This document shows, in pieces, positions 41,632 through 58,978 of a stretch of DNA of 64,000 bases (position 1 is its first letter; every line of letters starts with the position of its first letter). The notes beneath the pieces were generated by a model. The model had not been told where the DNA came from, did not search any database, and worked only from the letters and a program-made list of their open reading frames with translations. This stretch comes from Selaginella moellendorffii (Eukaryota > Plantae > Lycopodiophyta): contig NW_003314326.1 in assembly GCF_000143415.4 (NCBI RefSeq), forward strand, positions 372,001-436,000. Reading direction: 5' to 3'. A program made the translations under genes and the position numbers.

Positions 41632-42365
41632 NNNNNNNNNNNNNNNNNNNNNNNNNNNNNNNNNNNNNNNNNNNNNNNNNNNNNNNNNNNNNNNNNNNNN
41701 NNNNNNNNNNNNNNNNNNNNNNNNNNNNNNNNNNNNNNNNNNNNNNNNNNNNNNNNNNNNNNNNNNNNNNNNNNNNNNNNNNNNNNNNNNNNNNNNNNNN
41801 NNNNNNNNNNNNNNNNNNNNNNNNNNNNNNNNNNNNNNNNNNNNNNNNNNNNNNNNNNNNNNNNNNNNNNNNNNNNNNNNNNNNNNNNNNNNNNNNNNNN
41901 NNNNNNNNNNNNNNNNNNNNNNNNNNNNNNNNNNNNNNNNNNNNNNNNNNNNNNNNNNNNNNNNNNNNNNNNNNNNNNNNNNNNNNNNNNNNNNNNNNNN
42001 NNNNNNNNNNNNNNNNNNNNNNNNNNNNNNNNNNNNNNNNNNNNNNNNNNNNNNNNNNNNNNNNNNNNNNNNNNNNNNNNNNNNNNNNNNNNNNNNNNNN
42101 NNNNNNNNNNNNNNNNNNNNNNNNNNNNNNNNNNNNNNNNNNNNNNNNNNNNNNNNNNNNNNNNNNNNNNNNNNNNNNNNNNNNNNNNNNNNNNNNNNNN
42201 NNNNNNNNNNNNNNNNNNNNNNNNNNNNNNNNNNNNNNNNNNNNNNNNNNNNNNNNNNNNNNNNNNNNNNNNNNNNNNNNNNNNNNNNNNNNNNNNNNNN
42301 NNNNNNNNNNNNNNNNNNNNNNNNNNNNNNNNNNNNNNNNNNNNNNNNNNNNNNNNNNNNNNNNN
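41632..42365. other. Assembly gap (734 N)
   Basis: Run of N. Confidence 1.
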
Positions 42366-50404: not shown

Positions 50405-52249
50405 TTATACCACGCTCTTTATCCTGGCTTTCCTCCGCAGTCGGTTCCTCCTGAGGATCTCCCTCCGACGCTTTCTTTCTTCCATCCTCGCAGCGATTTC
50501 GAGCTTCTTTTCTTCTTCCTCCGGTTGGAATGGCCGAGGCTGCTGGAACTGTTTTGGGATTGGCATTATCTCCGATCTCGTCTGTGCAACTTCCAGCGGG
50601 TGCCTCGCGAGTGAGAATGGCATGTTTGGAACGTCGGTGTCCAGCCAAGTAGCCAGATCTACGTGTTTAGGCAGTAACTTCTTACGCAAAACACCGTAGA
50701 CGTCTTCCACAACCTTGGGTCTTAACACCACCTCGGTTTTGCGTTGCTGGTCTTGGCTCCTGGGATCGTCAAGGCCTTCACGAAAATTCCCTGACCCATC
50801 GACAAATCCAGAGCGAGCCAGGAGATCCATTACGCTCGCGTAGTCCGGAGTGATTCCATAGCTCTCAACCATGATGAGCAGCTGCTCACGAGCATCATCC
50901 AGTTTTCCTTCTCGACAGCAGCCAAACACCAGCGCTCTGAAACTCTCGGCATTCGGAGCTGTGCCATCGAGCTGCATTGTCCTGAAGAGCCTCAAGGCTT
51001 CACAGCTATGCCCGTTAGAGGCATACGCAGCAACGATCGCAGACCAGGGAAGAACTCCAAGACCGTCCTTGCTCGAAACCATCATCTTGTCGAAACACTT
51101 TCGAGCGCTTTCCAAGCATCCACAGCTCCCATACAAGTTCACCAATCCAGCCCCGATCTTTCCATGAGCTTGAAAAACCTCTGGCATCCTCGAGTGCACG
51201 CGTCGTCCAACCTGGAGCTTTCGAGCGCTGGCACAAGCCTCCAACACGACTATGTAAGTGATGGGAAAGAAAACCATTTCCTTCGAGCGTTGGAAGATCT
51301 TGAGAGCATCTTTGTGACGGCCATTGGCAGCGTAGACAGCCACCAGCAGCGTCTTCGTGAGCTTGCTCTCAATCTGGTCCTTCTCCGAGTAGCTCAAAAA
51401 GAGTTTCCTAGCCCTCGAAACACTCCCGCAGAAACCATACATGCAAAGGAGTGAGTTCTTCACTTTCCAGTGGCTCTCGAGGCCGGACTCCACGATATGA
51501 GAGTGCAAAGCTCGCCCCTCCGCGAGACTCTTCAAGTGGATGCAAGCGTCCAGAGCTGTGATGAATCCAATCCTCACAGGCTTCATCCCATCACACAGCA
51601 TTCCCTTGTAGAGATCCAGCGACTCCTTGAAACAGCCCTCGTTGGAATGAAGCGCGATCATCCCAGTCCACGACACAACATCCCGGCAAGGCATCTGGAA
51701 GAAGATCTGTCTAGCCCGGCCAAGATGCCCATTGTGGGCATATGCGATGATCATCAAGATCGAAGAGAAAGCGTTCCTGTTCGCGCCCAGAGCATCAAAC
51801 ACCGACCTTGCATCCTCCACGGCCCCGCATTTCCCATAGAGCTTGATAAGAAGATTGCCCAAGAAGACGCTGTCGCCCAAGCCCCTCTTGACGATCCTCT
51901 CGTGCATCCACTTGCCCGTGGACAATGCCCCTGGCTCCAAGCAGCTCAGGAGAATCGTGGCATACTTCTCCTCGCGCCGGCTCCTCCGGCGGCGATCCAG
52001 CCGCGACTCCTCTCTCGCCGCGCGCGAGGAAGAAACCCGCTGCGTCCTGTCCCCGCCGTGGATCCCTATCCTGTCCCGCCAATCCATGATCATCTGGGCG
52101 TACGCCGCCCATCGCGATCCCTCCATCCGCCGAGAGACATAGCTCAGGAAGCTCCCGGGCAGGTCCCCCATTTGCCTCCCTGCGTATCTTCCGAAAGGCA
52201 TCGTCTTCATCGCTGCCCCCGGCCGCAGCCGCCATGCCTGGCGACCCAT
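50405..52249 (-). CDS. PLS-class PPR protein with atypical N-terminal (MPFGRYxG) and basic C-terminal extensions
   Basis: 614-aa intact ORF with PLS motifs (LYGKCGAVEDARSVFD; DVVSWTGMI; WSAIVAAYASNGH). No E/DYW domain. Confidence 0.88.
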   Translation of the reverse strand: MGRQAWRLRPGAAMKTMPFGRYAGRQMGDLPGSFLSYVSRRMEGSRWAAYAQMIMDWRDRIGIHGGDRTQRVSSSRAAREESRLDRRRRSRREEKYATILLSCLEPGALSTGKWMHERIVKRGLGDSVFLGNLLIKLYGKCGAVEDARSVFDALGANRNAFSSILMIIAYAHNGHLGRARQIFFQMPCRDVVSWTGMIALHSNEGCFKESLDLYKGMLCDGMKPVRIGFITALDACIHLKSLAEGRALHSHIVESGLESHWKVKNSLLCMYGFCGSVSRARKLFLSYSEKDQIESKLTKTLLVAVYAANGRHKDALKIFQRSKEMVFFPITYIVVLEACASARKLQVGRRVHSRMPEVFQAHGKIGAGLVNLYGSCGCLESARKCFDKMMVSSKDGLGVLPWSAIVAAYASNGHSCEALRLFRTMQLDGTAPNAESFRALVFGCCREGKLDDAREQLLIMVESYGITPDYASVMDLLARSGFVDGSGNFREGLDDPRSQDQQRKTEVVLRPKVVEDVYGVLRKKLLPKHVDLATWLDTDVPNMPFSLARHPLEVAQTRSEIMPIPKQFQQPRPFQPEEEEKKLEIAARMEERKRRREILRRNRLRRKARIKSVV

Positions 52250-52461
52250 TCTCCTCCATAGCCAAGCGCTTTGACCCTAGAATCTAGATTGAATTTATGC
52301 TTTATAGTTGACTACGTTAATCTCAAACATTATCTGGTCACCCCAGAGTGGAACAGCTGGGATCTCTGGGATCTCTTGGATTCGGAGTAAAGAACTGTGA
52401 TTGGTTTGCTATGCTCAGCAGCGTTCCTTCCATTAGAAACAAAACTACTTCCCCAAGCCTC

Positions 52462-55295
52462 CTATTCTTCAACTCTATCTATGACTGCTCTGCCAAATCG
52501 ATCATAACCGAGTGCTGCTGCCTCTGAGATGTAGCCTTCTCTGAAAAACGGCCATAGAGAGCTCTCAGTATCTGGGATGAATTTGCTCACAAAACTCGAA
52601 AGGAACTCATCTGCATTGAAATCCTCGTCGTCACCATCGTTGTCACCAGGGCCTCCAACGTACTGGACCATCCCCATGTCGATGCAAAACACCTGAGCGT
52701 GGCCTCCCACAACGAATTCGATGTCAGCTCCATTGAAGCCGCCCTTGAAGTGCATCCTGGCAAGAAGGCGAGCTTCGTCGGTGACGACTTTAGAAAGGTC
52801 CAGCTCCTGCTCGAGACCAAAAACCTGGTTGTTCTTCACCAAAAGCTCCGGTCTTTCAAAAAACGTTTTACTATCCAGCTCCTCCAGCCATCTCAACCGC
52901 AGATCCCACGGCACTTTTGGCCTGCCGTCCCATTCTCCTGGAAAGTATAAGCTTCTCAAACGTTCCTCCAAGTTATCATCCATCATGACTCTTTCCTGTA
53001 GGATGCACGGACCTCCAATGTTGAATGGACCATCTTCAAGTAATCCGAAGCACAAAGCTTACGCGATTCCTGGAGAAATTCGACCTCCATCTCTGCTTGT
53101 TCCTGGGAACAGTTCACAGTCTTCTTGATCACTTTAAGAACTCTATCGGTTGTTGTCTGATAGAACACCATTCCATACTGGCCGGAGGATAGAGACACGA
53201 GATCAATGCCATTCCTGTAAAGAAAATTTTAGCATCTCAGAATCTTAAAATCAATTATATACTTACGTCCTCGCCCTGTAATCATCGTTTCCATCAATTG
53301 GAAAGTCCCATGTTGAAAGCATGCGTTCCATCAAATTCTCAAGTGTGGCTCTCTCTTCTGATTGTTCTCCAACTTCACTTTCCAATGCGGTTCTAAGTTT
53401 TTGATAGAATAGAAAAGCCGGTTGACTAAGCGACATCCAAAGATCTTGCACATCTCTATCATTGCCATTTTCCTGAAAACAATGAAAACAATAGTCAATA
53501 GCTTTCCAGAAGCTTTTGAAACCAGACTTACCTCCATGAATTTTACGGCTGCCGCAAAAAAAACACTTTCATGGCATACGAAGGTAGCAAAGGATTCGTT
53601 GGTGTCGACTTTTTTGAGGCATGAGACGCTTAAATACCTCCCAACCATCACAACTTTTCTCACCAAAGTGACGAAAGTCTTATCAATGGAAATCAAAAAT
53701 TCAATACGTAAACTAAACAATCAATCAACTCACCAGTGTTGTAATAAAGCTTTCCAGCTCGAGCATTGCAGCCAGTAAGGCATCGGGGATGGATCCTGTG
53801 TTGAAGCGCCATACGGAAAACACAAGCCTTGATAGCATGGCGCGCACGAAGCAAAGACGAATCTGAAAGCAGCAGCAGCTCAGAAGCTCTTCTAGACTCT
53901 TGGTGCTCAAAGCCAGCAGCAAGCATAAAATACATTGAAGACGTTTCTATGCGGCCAAAGAAGTCGAAGAACTGTCGAACATTCCATAACGCAGGCTTCG
54001 ATGACGCTAAAATTTCTTGAAGCAAATCCACGGGCCTCTTTATGACGATTACGATTGCCACCTGAGAAGTAAGTAGGACTGCTCTCCTTGCTGAAAGAAG
54101 ATGTTGAGTGTGAACTTCTGGAAGCGACCACAGAGCTCGTGCCGCAGCAACTTGTCCCAAGTCCAAGTCCCTTAGAAAACTCGCCGATGCCATACGGAGT
54201 TCATCTACAGGAGGCAGGATGTCCGCAAAAGCAAGCACTTCCTCGTCGACCTGAAAGCTTGCCCCCTGATACCGTACTACGAGACGAGAAGTAGACGCTA
54301 GGAACAGCACTCCAGCTGAGTAGTAACCATCCTTCGCAATAATCTGTGGATATCCTGTGCATATAAAGCCATCTGATCGCCAAGCAACCGTCTCCACAAT
54401 CCTGAAATCGCTGCTCACGTAGACTTGGTTCCCGTTGCACAAAACTGCCACCAAAACTTTATCCGAAGATGCTGCTACACGCGAGAGCGGAGTGATGGAG
54501 ATGGCATCTGTGACAACAACCTCGCCAACGTCCTAGCAGCTATGAAGGTCAATCGCTGTTCTTCTTCTCCGACCGCGAGTATAACAGGTGCCTCTCTTCG
54601 TCATAACATAGCTGCAGAACCAGCGTCCTTCGCCTGCAATGAGCTCTTTTAAACACTTGGAGAAGAATTTCAAAAACGAAATACCTGACGAAGGAGAAGA
54701 ATCCACCAGTAAGTCTCTGGAAGTAAGCTTCCGTCAGCTTGTAAAATGACCATCAAGACCACCCAGAAAAATTCCCTGCCAGGATGCTTCAATACAGGTA
54801 ACCAGAACATTTCCTGTGGGTATTGATGACACTTTTACAAGCTCAAGTGAAAGTAGAATCACCTGGAAATAAAAAACATTGCCAATCACTAACAATTTTA
54901 TTCTAGCACTAGAACTTACCTCCGTGGAGGATGCCAAGACTATATTCTGCTCTTTAGCTCCCACAGCCCTCCATTCATCACCAGGTTGGCATGGATACCG
55001 CAGCAGTTTACCATCCCTGCAAGAGAAAAAACGTAGTTAGTTTTTGTTTTTCAAAAATACTACATCTGACCCTTCAATCCTCCACAGAAAAAAAGAGCTC
55101 TCCGATATTGCCCACGCCCTTGCGATCAAGGGAAGGAAACCACAAGAATGTATTCCTCCAGTCCTTACGTCCTCTGGAATGGAGCTTGCCGTGATCGAAG
55201 TAAAATGATCCATCTCCATCCCCAAGTCCCGCAATGAGTAGGGAGATCTTGAGTTCCTGAGGGTTGCTAAGCAACAGCTAGGTGTTGGATCTCAT
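52462..55295 (-). pseudogene. Divergent Nup155/Nup170-derived gene fused to a DUF3669-like kinase-fold domain (several frameshifts/stops)
   Basis: Six GT-AG introns of 51-59 nt (55070-55017, 54919-54863, 54684-54634, 53733-53679, 53531-53473, 53266-53215). They link Nup155-like segments (CGFLPLIARAWAISESSFFLWR; IFLGGLDGH; YDEERHLLYSR; TQHLLSARR...KRPVDLLQEIL...FFDFFGRIETSSMYFMLAA) to SSGQYGMV...VLKV...LARMHFKGGFNGADIEFVV...IDMGMV...LWPFFREGY. Confidence 0.72.
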
Positions 55296-55538
55296 GGCTG
55301 CAGCAGGAGCGATGCTAGTAAGACTGGTATGGAGTGGTATGCCTTTTAGATTTTGCCCCAAATCGATTATCCTTTCAGGTATCATCACAACTGTTGAAAC
55401 ACGACTCTCTCCGTCGAATCGTCTCGACTTAGACGACCTTGTTTTATCAGCGATTCGAAGATGTTTGATGTTTCCAACCTTCGTTTTTCCTGCTCTGGAA
55501 GGGATCACAAGCTTGATCAATCGACAGCGAGGTACCTC

Positions 55539-56220
55539 ATGCGCTATCCCGGCATTCGAGAGCCGAGTACGAACCTGAATATGTTGCGAGTAAGCTTTGC
55601 ATTTGCTCGTGCCTCAATCGATGGATTTGTTTGTTGTTGGCGATTCAGGAGCAACGAACACACGAAGCTCAACCTCGAGAAGCTCCAAGCTTTGGATGAC
55701 AGCAACAGGTACTTCGATCAATCGGCAGCAACAGTGATCACAAGGTACCTCCAGTTCTTAAGGTCCTTCACTTTCTTTATCGGTCTTCAATGCTGTAGAA
55801 GTTTGCACTGTTTTTTGTTTTCAGCAGGGGTGATTCGAGAGGGAAAAAAGGAGCAGCGCAAGATCACGCCGAAGGTCAGTGATGCTGCTTGTCTTCAAGG
55901 CCTCGAATGTGGACATGAATTCGTATGAACAGGTAGCGCTGTTAACGAAATTCCTTTCCTCTGTTTTATGCTAGTTTCACAGAATGGAGCTGGGTTAATT
56001 ACAGCTAAGCTGGATTACTCAATAAGCGAAATGGATGGTAAGTTGCTGATTAGCTAGAGGGTTTTACAGGCAATTGACAGGGACGGTGATGTATATGGAA
56101 GCCTATTGGAACAGGTATGAGCTTTGAGAGGAATGTGCATTGTTTTCTCATTTCTTTCTTTTTCTAGGCCGCGGCTGTGCTCAGCATTCACAAGAATTTC
56201 GATCGAGAGGGCAACTCGAG
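55539..56220 (+). CDS. Small multi-exon gene or pseudogene of unknown function
   Basis: Several short GT-AG-bounded segments with protein-like translation (SNEHTKLNLEKLQALDDSNRYFDQSAATVIT; AIDRDGDVYGSLLEQ). No family recognised and the exact model is uncertain. Confidence 0.35.
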
Positions 56221-56411
56221 GTTTCTCTCCTTTTTTTTTTCTCGTCCTAGCTCTGATTGTTCTTGTTTGTCAACCACGAACTTCGGCCAACCAGACCTAA
56301 GTTCAGTAAGTCAGCTTCTCCCTTTTAGCCATTAGATATTTGCCATCCGACGGCTAGAAATGCCCTAAGTTTTGAAAGGGGGATTTCAGCCCTAAATCCC
56401 CGAGGGAGACG

Positions 56412-57516
56412 ATGGACAAGCGACGCAACGCCGCCGATTCAAGACTGGAGATTTACGGTGAGCTAGGAATGAAGCGCGATGAGCGCCTCACTCTCGACTT
56501 CGTGGGTCACACGTTCGTGGTTATGGACACGCACGAGGACAAGATCCTGTTCGTCCGCGACCGCATTCGCGAACGCTTCCACAGTTATGTCATCTTTTGT
56601 AACACAGCTGATTCGGTGGCGCTCGTCTCCAGCGCCCTCCTCTCTCCAGCGAATGACATGAAATACAATCCTTTCGACACCTTTCTTGCCGGTGACGAGT
56701 ACAAGTTTCGTCGGAGACCGCGAGCGCTGGTTACAAACAGCGATCTCAGGTAGACAAAATTGAATTTTTGTGACTCTTACGTTTGTTTCTCTCAGGGACG
56801 AGCGGCTGTTTGATGATCTCGACGGGAATCTGGTGGTAAACTATGACATCCCAGACGATCTGGCGACGTATTACTACCGTGCTGCAAGAGTTCATCACGA
56901 CTGTCGCTCCAAAGCAGTTGTTAATCTTGTTTTCAAAGAAGAGTTGCACAAGCTGATGCGTCACGAGGAGCTGCTGCGGCTGGAGATCTTGCCTAGCCGT
57001 CTTATCAATGTTCACATCGACTGGGAGTACGTATTTGTATAAACCTCTTTCTTCTCTTTGTTCTTGACAAGCTTTTGCTCGATCGCGTAGTGATCCACCA
57101 TTAGAAAGAGGCTCACTTACACAGCTCCAAGTCGCGGCTGGACGAGTGAGCATGGATGAATATCGCAGGTTTGACGAAACAAGGGGGTAAGAAAGTAAAA
57201 TCTTTTCAAGTAAAGAAACTCAACCTCTTGGTCTCAGGGAAGAAAGACCCAGGCGGACGGATGCGGCGGGAAGGCAAGCATTAATACTTTTCGTGTCTCT
57301 GACTGTTTTTTCTATCTCAGGGTCTCCTTGAAGGTGCCATGGTTTCACATCGAGGATCTAATCAAGCAGCCAAAAGCACGAAGCAAGAAAGTTATCGAGC
57401 CCCCAAAGCGAGAAAGCAAGAAAAGAAAGGCAGTGGACACTACTATCGAGCCCCCAAAGCGTTCTCGTTTGTTGCATAGTCTCTTGGCATGGTTTGGTTA
57501 TCCCGACTGTATATAA
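56412..57516 (+). CDS. Stand-alone eIF4A/eIF4A-III-like helicase C-terminal (RecA2) domain protein, copy A, 5 exons
   Basis: MKRDERLTLD...YVIFCNT...RALVT...LVVNYDIP...YYYRAAR...VVNLV parallels eIF4A-III VKRDELTLE...AVIFCNT...RVLIT...LVINYDLP...YIHRIGR...AINFV. Four introns splice in frame and the tail is Lys/Arg-rich. Confidence 0.78.
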
Positions 57517-57885
57517 AGTGATCTTTTCCGTGATCGATGAAACTTTTAAAAGTTTCTTGTGGTTCATGGAAAAGATCTTCAGGCAAAGAAAGGTGAGATC
57601 TTTCCTAAATTCTTATAGCTCGAGCTAAACTTCTTAATTTTGCATAGGAGATTCATTGCTCTAATCCTTCAATTCTAGTATTTCCTGATGTCAGGATGTA
57701 TGAGAGAAGCACAATACGCTTACGAAGTGTTTGCTGCGTTGAATCCTTGCAAGTCAAAAATCCTAAGGATTCGATTCCACCAGGAGGAAGATTTTGTAGA
57801 GCCTTTTCGACTAGATGCACTGAGTTTTAAAAACCCCTAGATCATTATGACTATGCCCTAAGTTTTGAAACGGGGATTTCAGACG

Positions 57886-58978
57886 ATGGACAAGCGACGC
57901 ACCGCCGCGGATTCAAGGCTTGAGATTTACGGTGAGCTAGGAATGAAGCGCGATGAGCGCCTCACTCTCGACTTCGTGGGTCACACGTTCGTGGTTATGG
58001 ACACGCACGAGGAGAAGATCCTGTACGTCCGCGACCGCATTCGCGAACGCTTCCACAGCTATGTCATCTTTTGTAACACCGCTGACTCGGTGGCACTCGT
58101 CTCCAGCGCTCTCCTCTCTCCAGCGAATGACATGAAATACAATCCTTTCGACACTTTTCTTGCCGGTGACGAGTACAAGTTTCCTCGGAGACCGCGAGCG
58201 CTGGTTACAAACAGCGATCTCAGGTAGAAAAAATTGAATTTTTGTCACTCTTACGTTTGTCTCTCTCAGGGACGAGCGGCTGTTTGATGATCTCAGAGGG
58301 AATCTGGTGGTAAACTATGACGTCCCAGACGATCTAGCGACGTATTACTACCGTGCTGCAAGAGTTCATAACCGCTGTTCCTCCAAAGCAGTTGTTAATC
58401 TTGTATTCAAGGAGGAGCTGCAAAAGCTGATGCGTTACGAGGAGCTGCTGCGGCTGGAGATCTTGCCTAGCCGTCTTATCAAGCTTCACATCTACTGGGA
58501 GTACGTATTTTTACAGTCCTCTTTCTTCTCTTTGTTCTTGACAGGTTTTTGTAGTGATCCACCCTTGGAAAAAGGCTCACTTACACAGCTTCAAGTCGCG
58601 GCTGGACGAGTGAGCATGGATGAGTATCGCAGGTTTGACGAAACAAGAGGGTAAGAATGTAAAATCTTTTCGAGTGTAGAAACTCACCCTGTGGGTCTCA
58701 GGGAAGAAAGACGTAGGGAGAAGGCTCAGCGGATGGAGGGAAGGCAAGCATTAATACTTTTCGTGTCTCTGACTGTGTTTCTCTATCTCAGGGTCTCCTT
58801 GAAGTTGCCATGGTCTGACATCGAGAATCTAATCGTGCAGCCAAAGGCACGAAGCAAGAAAGTGGACACTATCGAGCCCCCGAAGCGAGGAAGCAAGAAA
58901 AGAAAGGCAGTGGACACTATCGAGCCGCCAAAGCGTCCTCGTTTGTTGCATAGTTTTTTGTCATGGTTTGGACTGTAA
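57886..58978 (+). CDS. Stand-alone eIF4A-like RecA2 domain protein, copy B (tandem duplicate)
   Basis: Near-identical exon 1 and the same intron positions as copy A, offset 1474 bp. The spliced frame is open to TAA 58978. Confidence 0.78.

What the first reader, a model, noticed from the sequence alone, without database searches (positions are those of the whole stretch)
52462..55295. Nucleoporin Nup155 N-terminal half fused in frame to an atypical kinase-fold domain
Seen: seven exons joined by canonical 51-59-nt introns. Introns 4-6 splice in frame (...ESFITTL|TFVTLV...AAVKFME|ENGNDRD...YRART|NGIDLVSLSSGQYG...), running straight from nucleoporin-like sequence into the kinase-like domain. Established (recalled motifs): the upstream segments follow plant Nup155 in order through the beta-propeller and the start of the alpha-solenoid. 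Inference: a fast-evolving, truncated Nup155 paralog acquired an enzymatic domain in place of its C-terminal solenoid. This could be a pore-targeted kinase or a decoy-sensor fusion, an architecture I do not know from any described protein. This copy has several frameshifts/stops, so an intact version would have to exist in the other haplotype or in paralogs.
Basis: partly seen in the sequence, partly recalled or inferred. Interest (0 to 1): 0.8.

Follow-up and report, generated by a model that had tools for sequence, protein, structure and literature searches.

The report
Broken allele of nucleoporin–kinase-like fusion gene
This stretch of the Selaginella moellendorffii genome is a frameshifted copy of a real, expressed gene in which the front third of the nuclear-pore scaffold protein Nup155 (about residues 60-590 of 1464) is spliced in frame onto a small atypical kinase-like domain; an intact 826-residue version sits on another scaffold, probably the other haplotype.

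Summary
On the minus strand, 55213-52462, lie seven exons and six short introns (five canonical GT-AG, one with its acceptor lost). They run from Nup155-like sequence straight into a kinase-like domain.

- **Nup155 part:** pieces of the window and the intact protein hit solved NUP155 chains collinearly, up to E 1.1e-14, and no other family significantly.
- **C-terminal domain:** the last exon is a very divergent member of the fungal/algal "DUF3669" family. A confident model (pLDDT 86) has a protein-kinase-like fold closest to PRPK/Bud32 and Rio1 (Z 15.1 to 12.4).
- **Window copy is broken:** it lacks 1, 2, 26 and 28 nt in exons. A 14-nt deletion removes one acceptor. A roughly 1-kb inversion sits directly upstream of the start codon.
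- **Intact copy exists:** the counterpart on scaffold GL377637.1 encodes an uninterrupted 826-aa protein, RefSeq LOC9639921, annotated as uncharacterized. Spliced RNA contigs from three studies carry that version, including the nucleoporin-to-kinase junction.
- **Selection:** the two copies differ with pN/pS 0.23 (p 5e-7), so the fusion has been under purifying selection.
- **Spread:** no fusion of this kind was found outside this species, and no paper mentions the gene.

Function, such as a pore-targeted kinase or pseudokinase, remains inference.

The parts
55071..55219 (-). Exon 1 (ATG at 55219, or at 55213 as in the intact copy). Encodes the Nup155 N-terminal motif ...CGFLPLIARAWAISE..FLWR.
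   Evidence: hit to NUP155 9sob_D residues 81-111; exon span 55213-55071 and RNA joint 55015/55070.
55017..55070 (-). Intron 1, 54 nt, GT..AG
   Evidence: RNA joint in X2, X15 and X16. Matching intron in L002.
54920..55016 (-). Exon 2 (Nup155-like beta-propeller)
54863..54919 (-). Intron 2, 57 nt, GTAAGT..CAG
54685..54862 (-). Exon 3 (propeller; ...IFLGGLDGH motif). The window lacks 1 nt at about 54746, which shifts the frame.
   Evidence: RNA and DNA contigs carry one extra base after 54745; aligned to NUP155 residues 182-214.
54634..54684 (-). Intron 3, 51 nt, GT..AG
53734..54633 (-). Exon 4, the largest Nup155-like block (end of propeller and first helices of the solenoid). The window lacks 2 nt at about 54560 and 26 nt at about 53835; both shift the frame.
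   Evidence: E 2.8e-9 to NUP155 residues 459-591..
53688..53733 (-). Intron 4. In this copy its acceptor and the first 12 nt of exon 5 are removed by a 14-nt deletion near 53687.
   Evidence: 14 nt put in behind 53686 in DNA run X1, and 11 letters between the joint sides in RNA..
53532..53687 (-). Exon 5. Predicted helical, with no detectable homology.
53473..53531 (-). Intron 5, 59 nt, GTAAGT..CAG
53267..53472 (-). Exon 6, the last exon upstream of the kinase-like domain. The window has 21 extra in-frame nt (53288-53268, NDDYRAR).
53215..53266 (-). Intron 6, 52 nt, GTAAGT..CAG: the fusion junction
   Evidence: joint in all three RNA runs..
52462..53214 (-). Exon 7: the complete DUF3669-type protein-kinase-like domain plus the stop codon. 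The window lacks 28 nt at about 53053, a frameshift inside the N-lobe.
55297..56270 (.). Segment of about 1 kb that is inverted between this scaffold and the sister scaffold, directly upstream of the start codon. In the sister copy it supplies the spliced 5' leader of the transcript.
   Evidence: blastn orientation. 'opposite strands' joint 55216/55700, and GT..AG joints on the + strand at 55325/55378 and 55589/55649.

Best explanation
Shown. The window (Selaginella moellendorffii, GL377630.1) holds a decayed copy of a lineage-specific chimeric gene. The intact counterpart lies on GL377637.1, with the same neighbouring genes, and is most likely the other haplotype. It has seven exons and encodes an 826-aa protein. 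Residues about 1-385 descend from the Nup155 beta-propeller and the first solenoid helices. Residues about 385-566 are helical and of unresolved origin. Residues 567-826, encoded wholly by the last exon, are a complete DUF3669-type protein-kinase-like domain. That copy is transcribed and spliced as one mRNA. The two copies differ mainly at synonymous sites, so the fusion protein has been under purifying selection. The window copy has four frameshifting deletions, a lost splice acceptor and an inversion that detaches it from the 5' leader. No contig of at least 99% identity to it was seen in the RNA runs laid.

Inferred. A duplicated 5' part of Nup155 captured a DUF3669 gene as its terminal exon, because the domain boundary coincides with the exon boundary and with the N-terminus of free-standing family members. 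The Nup155-derived part probably acts as a targeting or scaffold module. In Nup155/Nup170 the N-terminal region contacts the pore membrane and inner-ring partners (recalled from the literature, not tested here). The kinase-like domain keeps the beta3 lysine, the catalytic-loop Asp/Glu and the DFG-type Asp. It has lost many family-invariant residues, so it may be a nucleotide-binding or weakly active kinase, or a pseudokinase, working at the nuclear envelope.
For: - **Organism and locus:**
- **Nup155 homology:**, with E down to 1.1e-14, four collinear blocks, and NUP155 as the only family hit.
- **Intact copy:** (P0011, 826 aa); it is encoded exactly by 7 exons and 6 GT-AG introns in L002; the flanks are collinear and carry the same neighbouring genes.
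- **Transcript:**. One spliced contig of 2565-3273 nt in X2, X15 and X16 (three studies) spans exon 1 to the 3' UTR. It has all six introns removed and carries the intact-copy indels (+28, +26, +2, +1 nt); these inserts are found verbatim in L002.
- **Selection:** one search gives 27 synonymous and 20 nonsynonymous differences, pN/pS 0.23. One search gives binomial p 5e-7.
- **Kinase-like domain:** (E 2e-7 to a Klebsormidium DUF3669 protein); relatives pass PF12417, including four free-standing Selaginella paralogs; pLDDT 85.9, pTM 0.88. Foldseek probability 1.0 to PRPK and CK2. Z 15.1 PRPK, 14.0 Bud32, 12.4 Rio1; the family profile hits A-Raf, Wee1 and CK1 at E 2e-4 to 1e-3, aligning G-x-G-x-x-G, the beta3 Lys and RDI..EF/..DF with HRD..N/..DFG. 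K33, D179, E181 and D194 are kept.
Against: - The window copy itself cannot make the protein.
- The fusion was found in one species only.
- The kinase-like domain sits on a branch of 3.74 changes per site against a median of 0.49. It has lost the family's signature NDPYYPRP motif, the 98%-conserved D176, and the G15, N138, Y123 and G125 positions. That fits relaxed constraint or loss of the ancestral activity.
- Only 8 of the 47 allelic differences lie in the kinase-like part, so selection on that domain alone is not shown.
- Residues 385-566 have no detectable relative, and the N-part could not be modelled (pLDDT 36).
- Pfam Nucleoporin_N is below threshold (15.4 against 23.7 bits).
- The RNA evidence comes from assembled contigs labelled 'RNA?' by guess, although intron removal shows they are RNA. 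Contigs cannot give expression level or exclude expression of the broken allele.
- Localisation and activity are untested.
Confidence: 0.8

Rival explanations
1. The chimera is a young, effectively neutral accident. A Nup155 fragment lay next to a DUF3669 gene and happens to be transcribed and spliced, with no function. One copy has already decayed and the other will follow.
For: - One of the two copies is broken in at least five places.
- The kinase-like domain has an extreme branch length and has lost family-invariant residues.
- The propeller is shortened by about 150 residues relative to NUP155.
- It is found in a single species.
Against: pN/pS between the copies is 0.23, with p 5e-7, even though one of the two lineages is a pseudogene. 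An 826-codon ORF is kept across seven exons with all splice sites canonical. The spliced transcript is assembled in three independent studies.
Confidence: 0.15
2. The window copy is actually intact, and its frameshifts are errors of the draft assembly.
For: Over 53407-55330, the 2024 DNA run X1 shows only the version with the extra bases. The window contains a scaffold gap elsewhere, at 41632-42365.
Against: Deletions of 14, 26 and 28 nt, a 21-nt insertion and a 1-kb inversion are not typical sequencing errors. They travel with about 1.9% substitutions across the coding exons (47 of 2478 sites), as expected of a distinct haplotype. In X1 both versions appear at about equal depth where two contigs are listed, at 53184 and 53437. 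Contigs drop one branch of a bubble, so absence is not evidence.
Confidence: 0.05
3. Two separate genes, a Nup155-like remnant and a free-standing DUF3669 kinase-like gene, are joined only by gene-model or assembly artefact.
For: Free-standing DUF3669 genes of about 300 aa exist in this genome. De Bruijn contigs can join neighbouring transcripts.
Against: The link is a precise removal of a canonical 52-nt GT-AG intron, in frame, in contigs of three studies. Exon 7 has no start codon at the family's N-terminus: its first Met lies inside the glycine-rich loop. The only ATG in intron 6 is out of frame and runs into a stop at the start of exon 7 (sequence).
Confidence: 0.03

Closest known systems
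Nup155 / Nup170 / Nup157 inner-ring nucleoporins (plant NUP155, PDB 9sob; human 5a9q, 7r1y)
   Same: Collinear sequence homology runs from the CG(I/F)(F/L)P.I.RAW...FLWR motif (NUP155 residues 81-118) through GRIF.AG.DGH (182-214) to the block 457-591, which ends the beta-propeller and starts the alpha-solenoid. NUP155 is the only family hit in the PDB.
   Different: The NUP155-aligned block is about 365 residues (20-382), against 511 in NUP155, so the propeller region is about 150 residues shorter. The C-terminal 870 residues of NUP155 have no detectable counterpart and are replaced by a kinase-like domain. Pfam Nucleoporin_N is sub-threshold and there is no Nucleoporin_C. It is a divergent truncated paralog, not the pore scaffold orthologue.
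Free-standing 'DUF3669' (PF12417) proteins of fungi, green algae and Selaginella (e.g. Klebsormidium GAQ78122.1, SELMODRAFT_424621)
   Same: It aligns end to end. It shares the beta3 Lys, the D-I-E-F-V catalytic-loop motif, the Asp of the I-D-F-N motif, and the C-terminal W..F...Y helix. E is 2e-7 to the Klebsormidium protein.
   Different: Identity is only 20-28%. There is no Pfam PF12417 hit. The NDPYYPRP signature is lost, along with D176N, F195M/N196G, N138E and G125L. The domain is fused behind a nucleoporin fragment rather than free-standing. Its branch is about 7 times the family median.
PRPK/Bud32 and RIO atypical protein kinases
   Same: They are the best structural matches: Z 15.1 (rmsd 3.0 Å over 181 residues) for PRPK, 14.0 for Bud32 and 12.4 for Rio1. 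They share a minimal bilobal kinase fold without the large ePK C-lobe.
   Different: There is no significant sequence similarity to them (15-18% identity in the structural alignments). The catalytic loop is three residues shorter, with Glu in place of the metal-binding Asn. There is no KEOPS or ribosome-biogenesis context.
Vertebrate KRAB zinc-finger 'DUF3669' domain (ZNF746, ZNF777)
   Same: It shares only the Pfam accession with the fungal and algal proteins.
   Different: The vertebrate domain is a short oligomerising repressor module (PMC6923878), reported to derive from LINE-1 ORF1p (bioRxiv 10.1101/2025.03.01.640934). The proteins related to this gene are whole kinase-fold proteins. The Pfam label 'Zinc finger protein' is misleading here.

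Membership tests
Nup155/Nup170 nucleoporin | N-terminal beta-propeller homologous to Nup155 (Pfam Nucleoporin_N PF08801) | tested here: inconclusive
   phmmer against the PDB gives NUP155 chains only: E 1.1e-14, 1.6e-12 and 1.6e-6, in four collinear blocks. The Pfam model scores 15.4 bits against a cut-off of 23.7. Single-sequence AF2 was unusable, with pLDDT 36. Descent from Nup155 is shown, but the propeller fold is not verified.
Nup155/Nup170 nucleoporin | Long C-terminal alpha-solenoid (Nucleoporin_C PF03177), total length about 1400 aa | tested here: not met
   The protein is 826 aa. Residues 567-826 are a kinase-like domain. There is no Nucleoporin_C hit and no NUP155 alignment beyond residue 591 of the 1464-aa chain.
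Nup155/Nup170 nucleoporin | Residence in the inner ring of the nuclear pore | not testable with these tools
   Needs localisation or interaction experiments.
DUF3669 (PF12417) kinase-like proteins | Pfam PF12417 signature (…IDFNQ…NDPYYPRP…) above 22 bits | tested here: not met
   No PF12417 hit for the window ORFs, P0001 or P0011, even at E up to 10. The motif reads K--FIPDT. All relatives found pass it.
DUF3669 (PF12417) kinase-like proteins | Full-length homology to family members | tested here: met
   phmmer gives E 2e-7 to 6.5e-4 to five DUF3669 proteins in 1.84 billion representatives. ESM-feature score is 0.97 to a DUF3669 cluster.
Protein-kinase-like (PKL) superfamily | Bilobal kinase fold | tested here: met
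   AF2 with a 55-sequence alignment gives pLDDT 85.9 and pTM 0.88. The 50 listed Foldseek matches are nearly all protein kinases (plus one APH and AceK, same fold), probability 0.93-1.0. VIA-align gives Z 15.1, 14.0 and 12.4 to PRPK, Bud32 and Rio1.
Protein-kinase-like (PKL) superfamily | Catalytic residues: beta3 Lys, catalytic-loop Asp, metal-binding Asn (or equivalent), DFG Asp | tested here: met
   K33, D179, E181 and D194 (numbering of P0011:562-826) are invariant in the family and kept in the fusion. Their equivalence to K / HRD-D / N / DFG-D rests on the profile alignment to CK1 and Raf. The first Gly of the G-loop is Ser, and the Arg of the 'RD' pair is Ala.
Protein-kinase-like (PKL) superfamily | ATP binding / phosphotransfer activity | not testable with these tools
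   Needs biochemical assay.

The most novel reading that the evidence does not exclude
Selaginella has evolved a functional protein that uses a cut-down Nup155 propeller as an address label to place a Bud32/RIO-like atypical kinase or pseudokinase at the nuclear pore membrane. It would be a nucleoporin-derived signalling enzyme with no described counterpart in any eukaryote, and it segregates as a presence/absence (intact/broken) polymorphism in the sequenced plant.
Probability: 0.3. Interest if true: 0.7.

Novelty: new variant of a known kind. Interest (0 to 1): 0.5.

Why it matters
Core pore scaffold proteins such as Nup155 are normally single-copy and architecturally frozen. This is an expressed paralog, kept by selection, that trades the C-terminal solenoid for an enzyme-like domain. 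It would be a rare natural experiment in re-using a pore-targeting module.

It also gives a first functional handle on the large, unstudied fungal/algal 'DUF3669' family. That family is shown here to have a Bud32/RIO-like kinase fold, despite its misleading Pfam label.

The intact/broken pair in one genome offers a ready-made natural knockout comparison. The find is limited to one species so far, and the copy in this window is dead, so its general importance is moderate.

Tried and rejected
- **Pfam on window ORF pieces:** nothing relevant at E up to 1.
- **Word-index protein search with the 197-aa C-terminal ORF:** nothing. The exhaustive HMMER search was therefore used.
- **Candidate intron 53062-52996 as an explanation of the frame change in exon 7:** rejected, because splicing there is out of frame. 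The real cause is a 28-nt deletion.
- **Plus-strand GT..AG joints at 55325-55649:** I first read these as the 5' UTR of the neighbouring plus-strand gene. I replaced that reading when blastn showed the segment is inverted in the expressed copy.
- **D176 as catalytic base:** I first took it as such from the 5-residue spacing to E181, which would have made the fusion a D-to-N pseudokinase. I withdrew this after the family profile aligned R-D179-I..E-F with CK1's R-D-I-K-P-D-N-F.
- **Residues 380-566:** no signal from phmmer against the PDB or from ESM features.
- **Single-sequence AF2 of residues 1-566:** pLDDT 36, not used for a fold search.
- **Placing the kinase-like domain in the family tree:** unresolved because of its long branch. 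A clade with the Selaginella free-standing paralogs is not rejected (AU p 0.41) but not shown either.
- **Paralogs inside the window:** none.
- **Literature:** no paper names the gene, and none links DUF3669 to a kinase-like fold.
Full report
**What is in the window**

The region 52462-55295 lies on the minus strand of Selaginella moellendorffii scaffold GL377630.1. Three-frame translation shows coding-like segments that switch frame repeatedly. They are separated by short GT..AG introns. Pfam found nothing in the individual ORFs.

Two pieces hit solved NUP155 chains, and they do so collinearly:
- The 253-aa ORF at 53696-54454(-) matches a 1464-aa NUP155 chain (9sob_D) at residues 459-591, E 2.8e-9.
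- The ORF at 55040-55291(-) matches residues 81-111 of the same chain.

**The C-terminal domain**

The 197-aa terminal ORF (52465-53055) had no Pfam hit, no PDB sequence hit and no word-index hit. ESM features pointed to DUF3669 clusters with a score of 0.97.

An exhaustive HMMER search of 1.84 billion representatives returned only six proteins. One was the annotated model of this locus: P0001, SELMODRAFT_424102, UniProt D8SNT7, 699 aa. The other five were proteins of 124-305 aa, including one from Klebsormidium nitens. All five pass Pfam PF12417.

A profile search then found 158 family members in green algae, fungi and a chytrid. It also found four free-standing paralogs in Selaginella itself. 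Earlier first-stage notes on this genome likewise report several free-standing DUF3669-like genes.

The fused domain aligns with these proteins from their N-terminus to their C-terminus. The alignment begins exactly at the first codon of the last exon.

**Kinase fold**

| Test | Result |
|---|---|
| AF2 on P0011:562-826 with a 55-sequence alignment | pLDDT 85.9, pTM 0.88 |
| Foldseek top matches | PRPK, Bud32, CK2 and Aurora, probability 1.0 |
| VIA-align | Z 15.1 PRPK (rmsd 3.0 Å over 181 residues), 14.0 Bud32, 12.4 Rio1, about 12 MTR kinase and APH(2'') |
| Family profile against the PDB by sequence | A-Raf E 2.4e-4, Wee1-like 3.6e-4, CK1 1e-3 |

The profile alignment pairs the glycine-rich loop, the beta3 lysine, and R-D-I..E-F / ..D-F-N with the HRD..N / DFG motifs.

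The fusion keeps K33, D179, E181 and D194. It departs from the family at many near-invariant positions:
- G15S
- Y123R
- G125L
- N138E
- D176N
- F195M and N196G
- the NDPYYPRP motif

Its branch in the family tree is 3.74 changes per site, against a median of 0.49. Whether it came from the Selaginella paralogs cannot be resolved; a joint clade is not rejected (AU p 0.41).

**The intact copy and the transcript**

Laying contigs of one DNA run and three RNA-type runs from four studies on 52300-55700 gave one spliced contig per RNA run, 2565-3273 nt long and about 98% identical to the window. It runs from exon 1 to the 3' UTR with all six introns removed. It differs from the window by +28 nt after 53050, +26 nt after 53833, +2 nt after 54559 and +1 nt after 54745. 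These are exactly the places where the window changes frame.

A word search with P0001 found P0011 (826 aa, RefSeq 'uncharacterized protein LOC9639921 isoform X2') and P0012 (875 aa, SELMODRAFT_446530) on scaffold GL377637.1. P0011 is encoded there exactly by seven exons with GT-AG introns of 54, 57, 53, 48, 59 and 52 nt. The RNA-specific insertions occur verbatim in that scaffold.

P0011 hits NUP155 of several organisms at E 1.1e-14, 1.6e-12 and 1.6e-6. The blocks are collinear: 20-56 to 81-118, 93-124 to 182-214, and 254-382 to 457-591. Pfam Nucleoporin_N stays below threshold.

**How the two copies compare**

The scaffolds are collinear over about 15 kb and share neighbouring genes, including a PPR gene downstream. 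Identity is 92-95% with gaps counted. One segment of about 1 kb (window 55297-56270) is inverted, directly upstream of the start codon. In the expressed copy this segment provides the spliced 5' leader. This is inferred from the 'opposite strands' joint and the plus-strand GT..AG joints.

Within the CDS the window differs from the intact copy as follows:
- It lacks 1, 2, 26 and 28 nt in exons.
- It lacks 14 nt that include the intron-4 acceptor.
- It has 21 extra in-frame nt.

There are 47 substitutions, 27 synonymous and 20 nonsynonymous. That gives pS 0.047, pN 0.0105 and pN/pS 0.23. The synonymous excess has binomial p 5e-7.

Purifying selection has therefore acted on the fusion protein for most of the time since the copies diverged, and the decay of the window copy is recent. 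No RNA contig of at least 99% identity to the window was seen. Contigs cannot exclude low expression.

**Limits**

- Residues about 385-566 are predicted helical but have no detectable relative.
- The N-terminal part could not be modelled without an alignment (pLDDT 36).
- I could not retrieve Selaginella's canonical Nup155, so the duplication is undated.
- The fusion was found only in this species. Lycophyte sampling in the databases is thin.
- No paper mentions the gene or the kinase-like nature of fungal/algal DUF3669 proteins. The DUF3669 literature concerns an unrelated-looking vertebrate zinc-finger module.

**Verdict**

The window holds the broken allele of a genuine, expressed, selectively maintained Nup155(N)-kinase-like chimeric gene. 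That gene is already present in databases as an unnamed model and has never been described. A role as a pore-targeted kinase or pseudokinase is a reasonable inference but is untested.

Noticed in passing
window 55297-56270, compared with L002 10097-11078: A segment of about 1 kb is inverted between the two scaffolds, directly upstream of the fusion gene's ATG. No long inverted repeats were found at the breakpoints: the only pair is 18 nt, 83% complementary, and lies inside the segment.
   Followed up: partly
window 56412-57519 and 57865-58971 (+): Two tandem copies, about 91% identical to each other, of a gene annotated as 297/298 aa. Their ORFs begin MDKRRNAADSRLEIYGEL.... The only Pfam signal is a sub-threshold Helicase_C trace (14.3 bits). 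They may be a truncated DEAD-box-like duplicate pair.
   Followed up: partly
window 50405-52249 (-): A 614-aa PPR protein ORF starts about 30 nt downstream of the apparent 3' end of the fusion transcript. Its N-terminus shows a borderline hit to QSregVF_b (22.5 bits, E 1e-4).
   Followed up: no
Family level (proteins P0002-P0129): The fungal/algal 'DUF3669' proteins are complete Bud32/RIO-like kinase-fold proteins. Their catalytic loop is shortened (R-D-I-E-F), with Glu where kinases have the metal-binding Asn. The Pfam model covers only 66 positions around the DFG-equivalent and is labelled 'Zinc finger protein'. No paper in the searchable library describes them as kinase-like.
   Followed up: partly
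window 41632-42365: A scaffold gap of 734 N lies inside an AT-rich stretch (GC 0.23-0.32).
   Followed up: no
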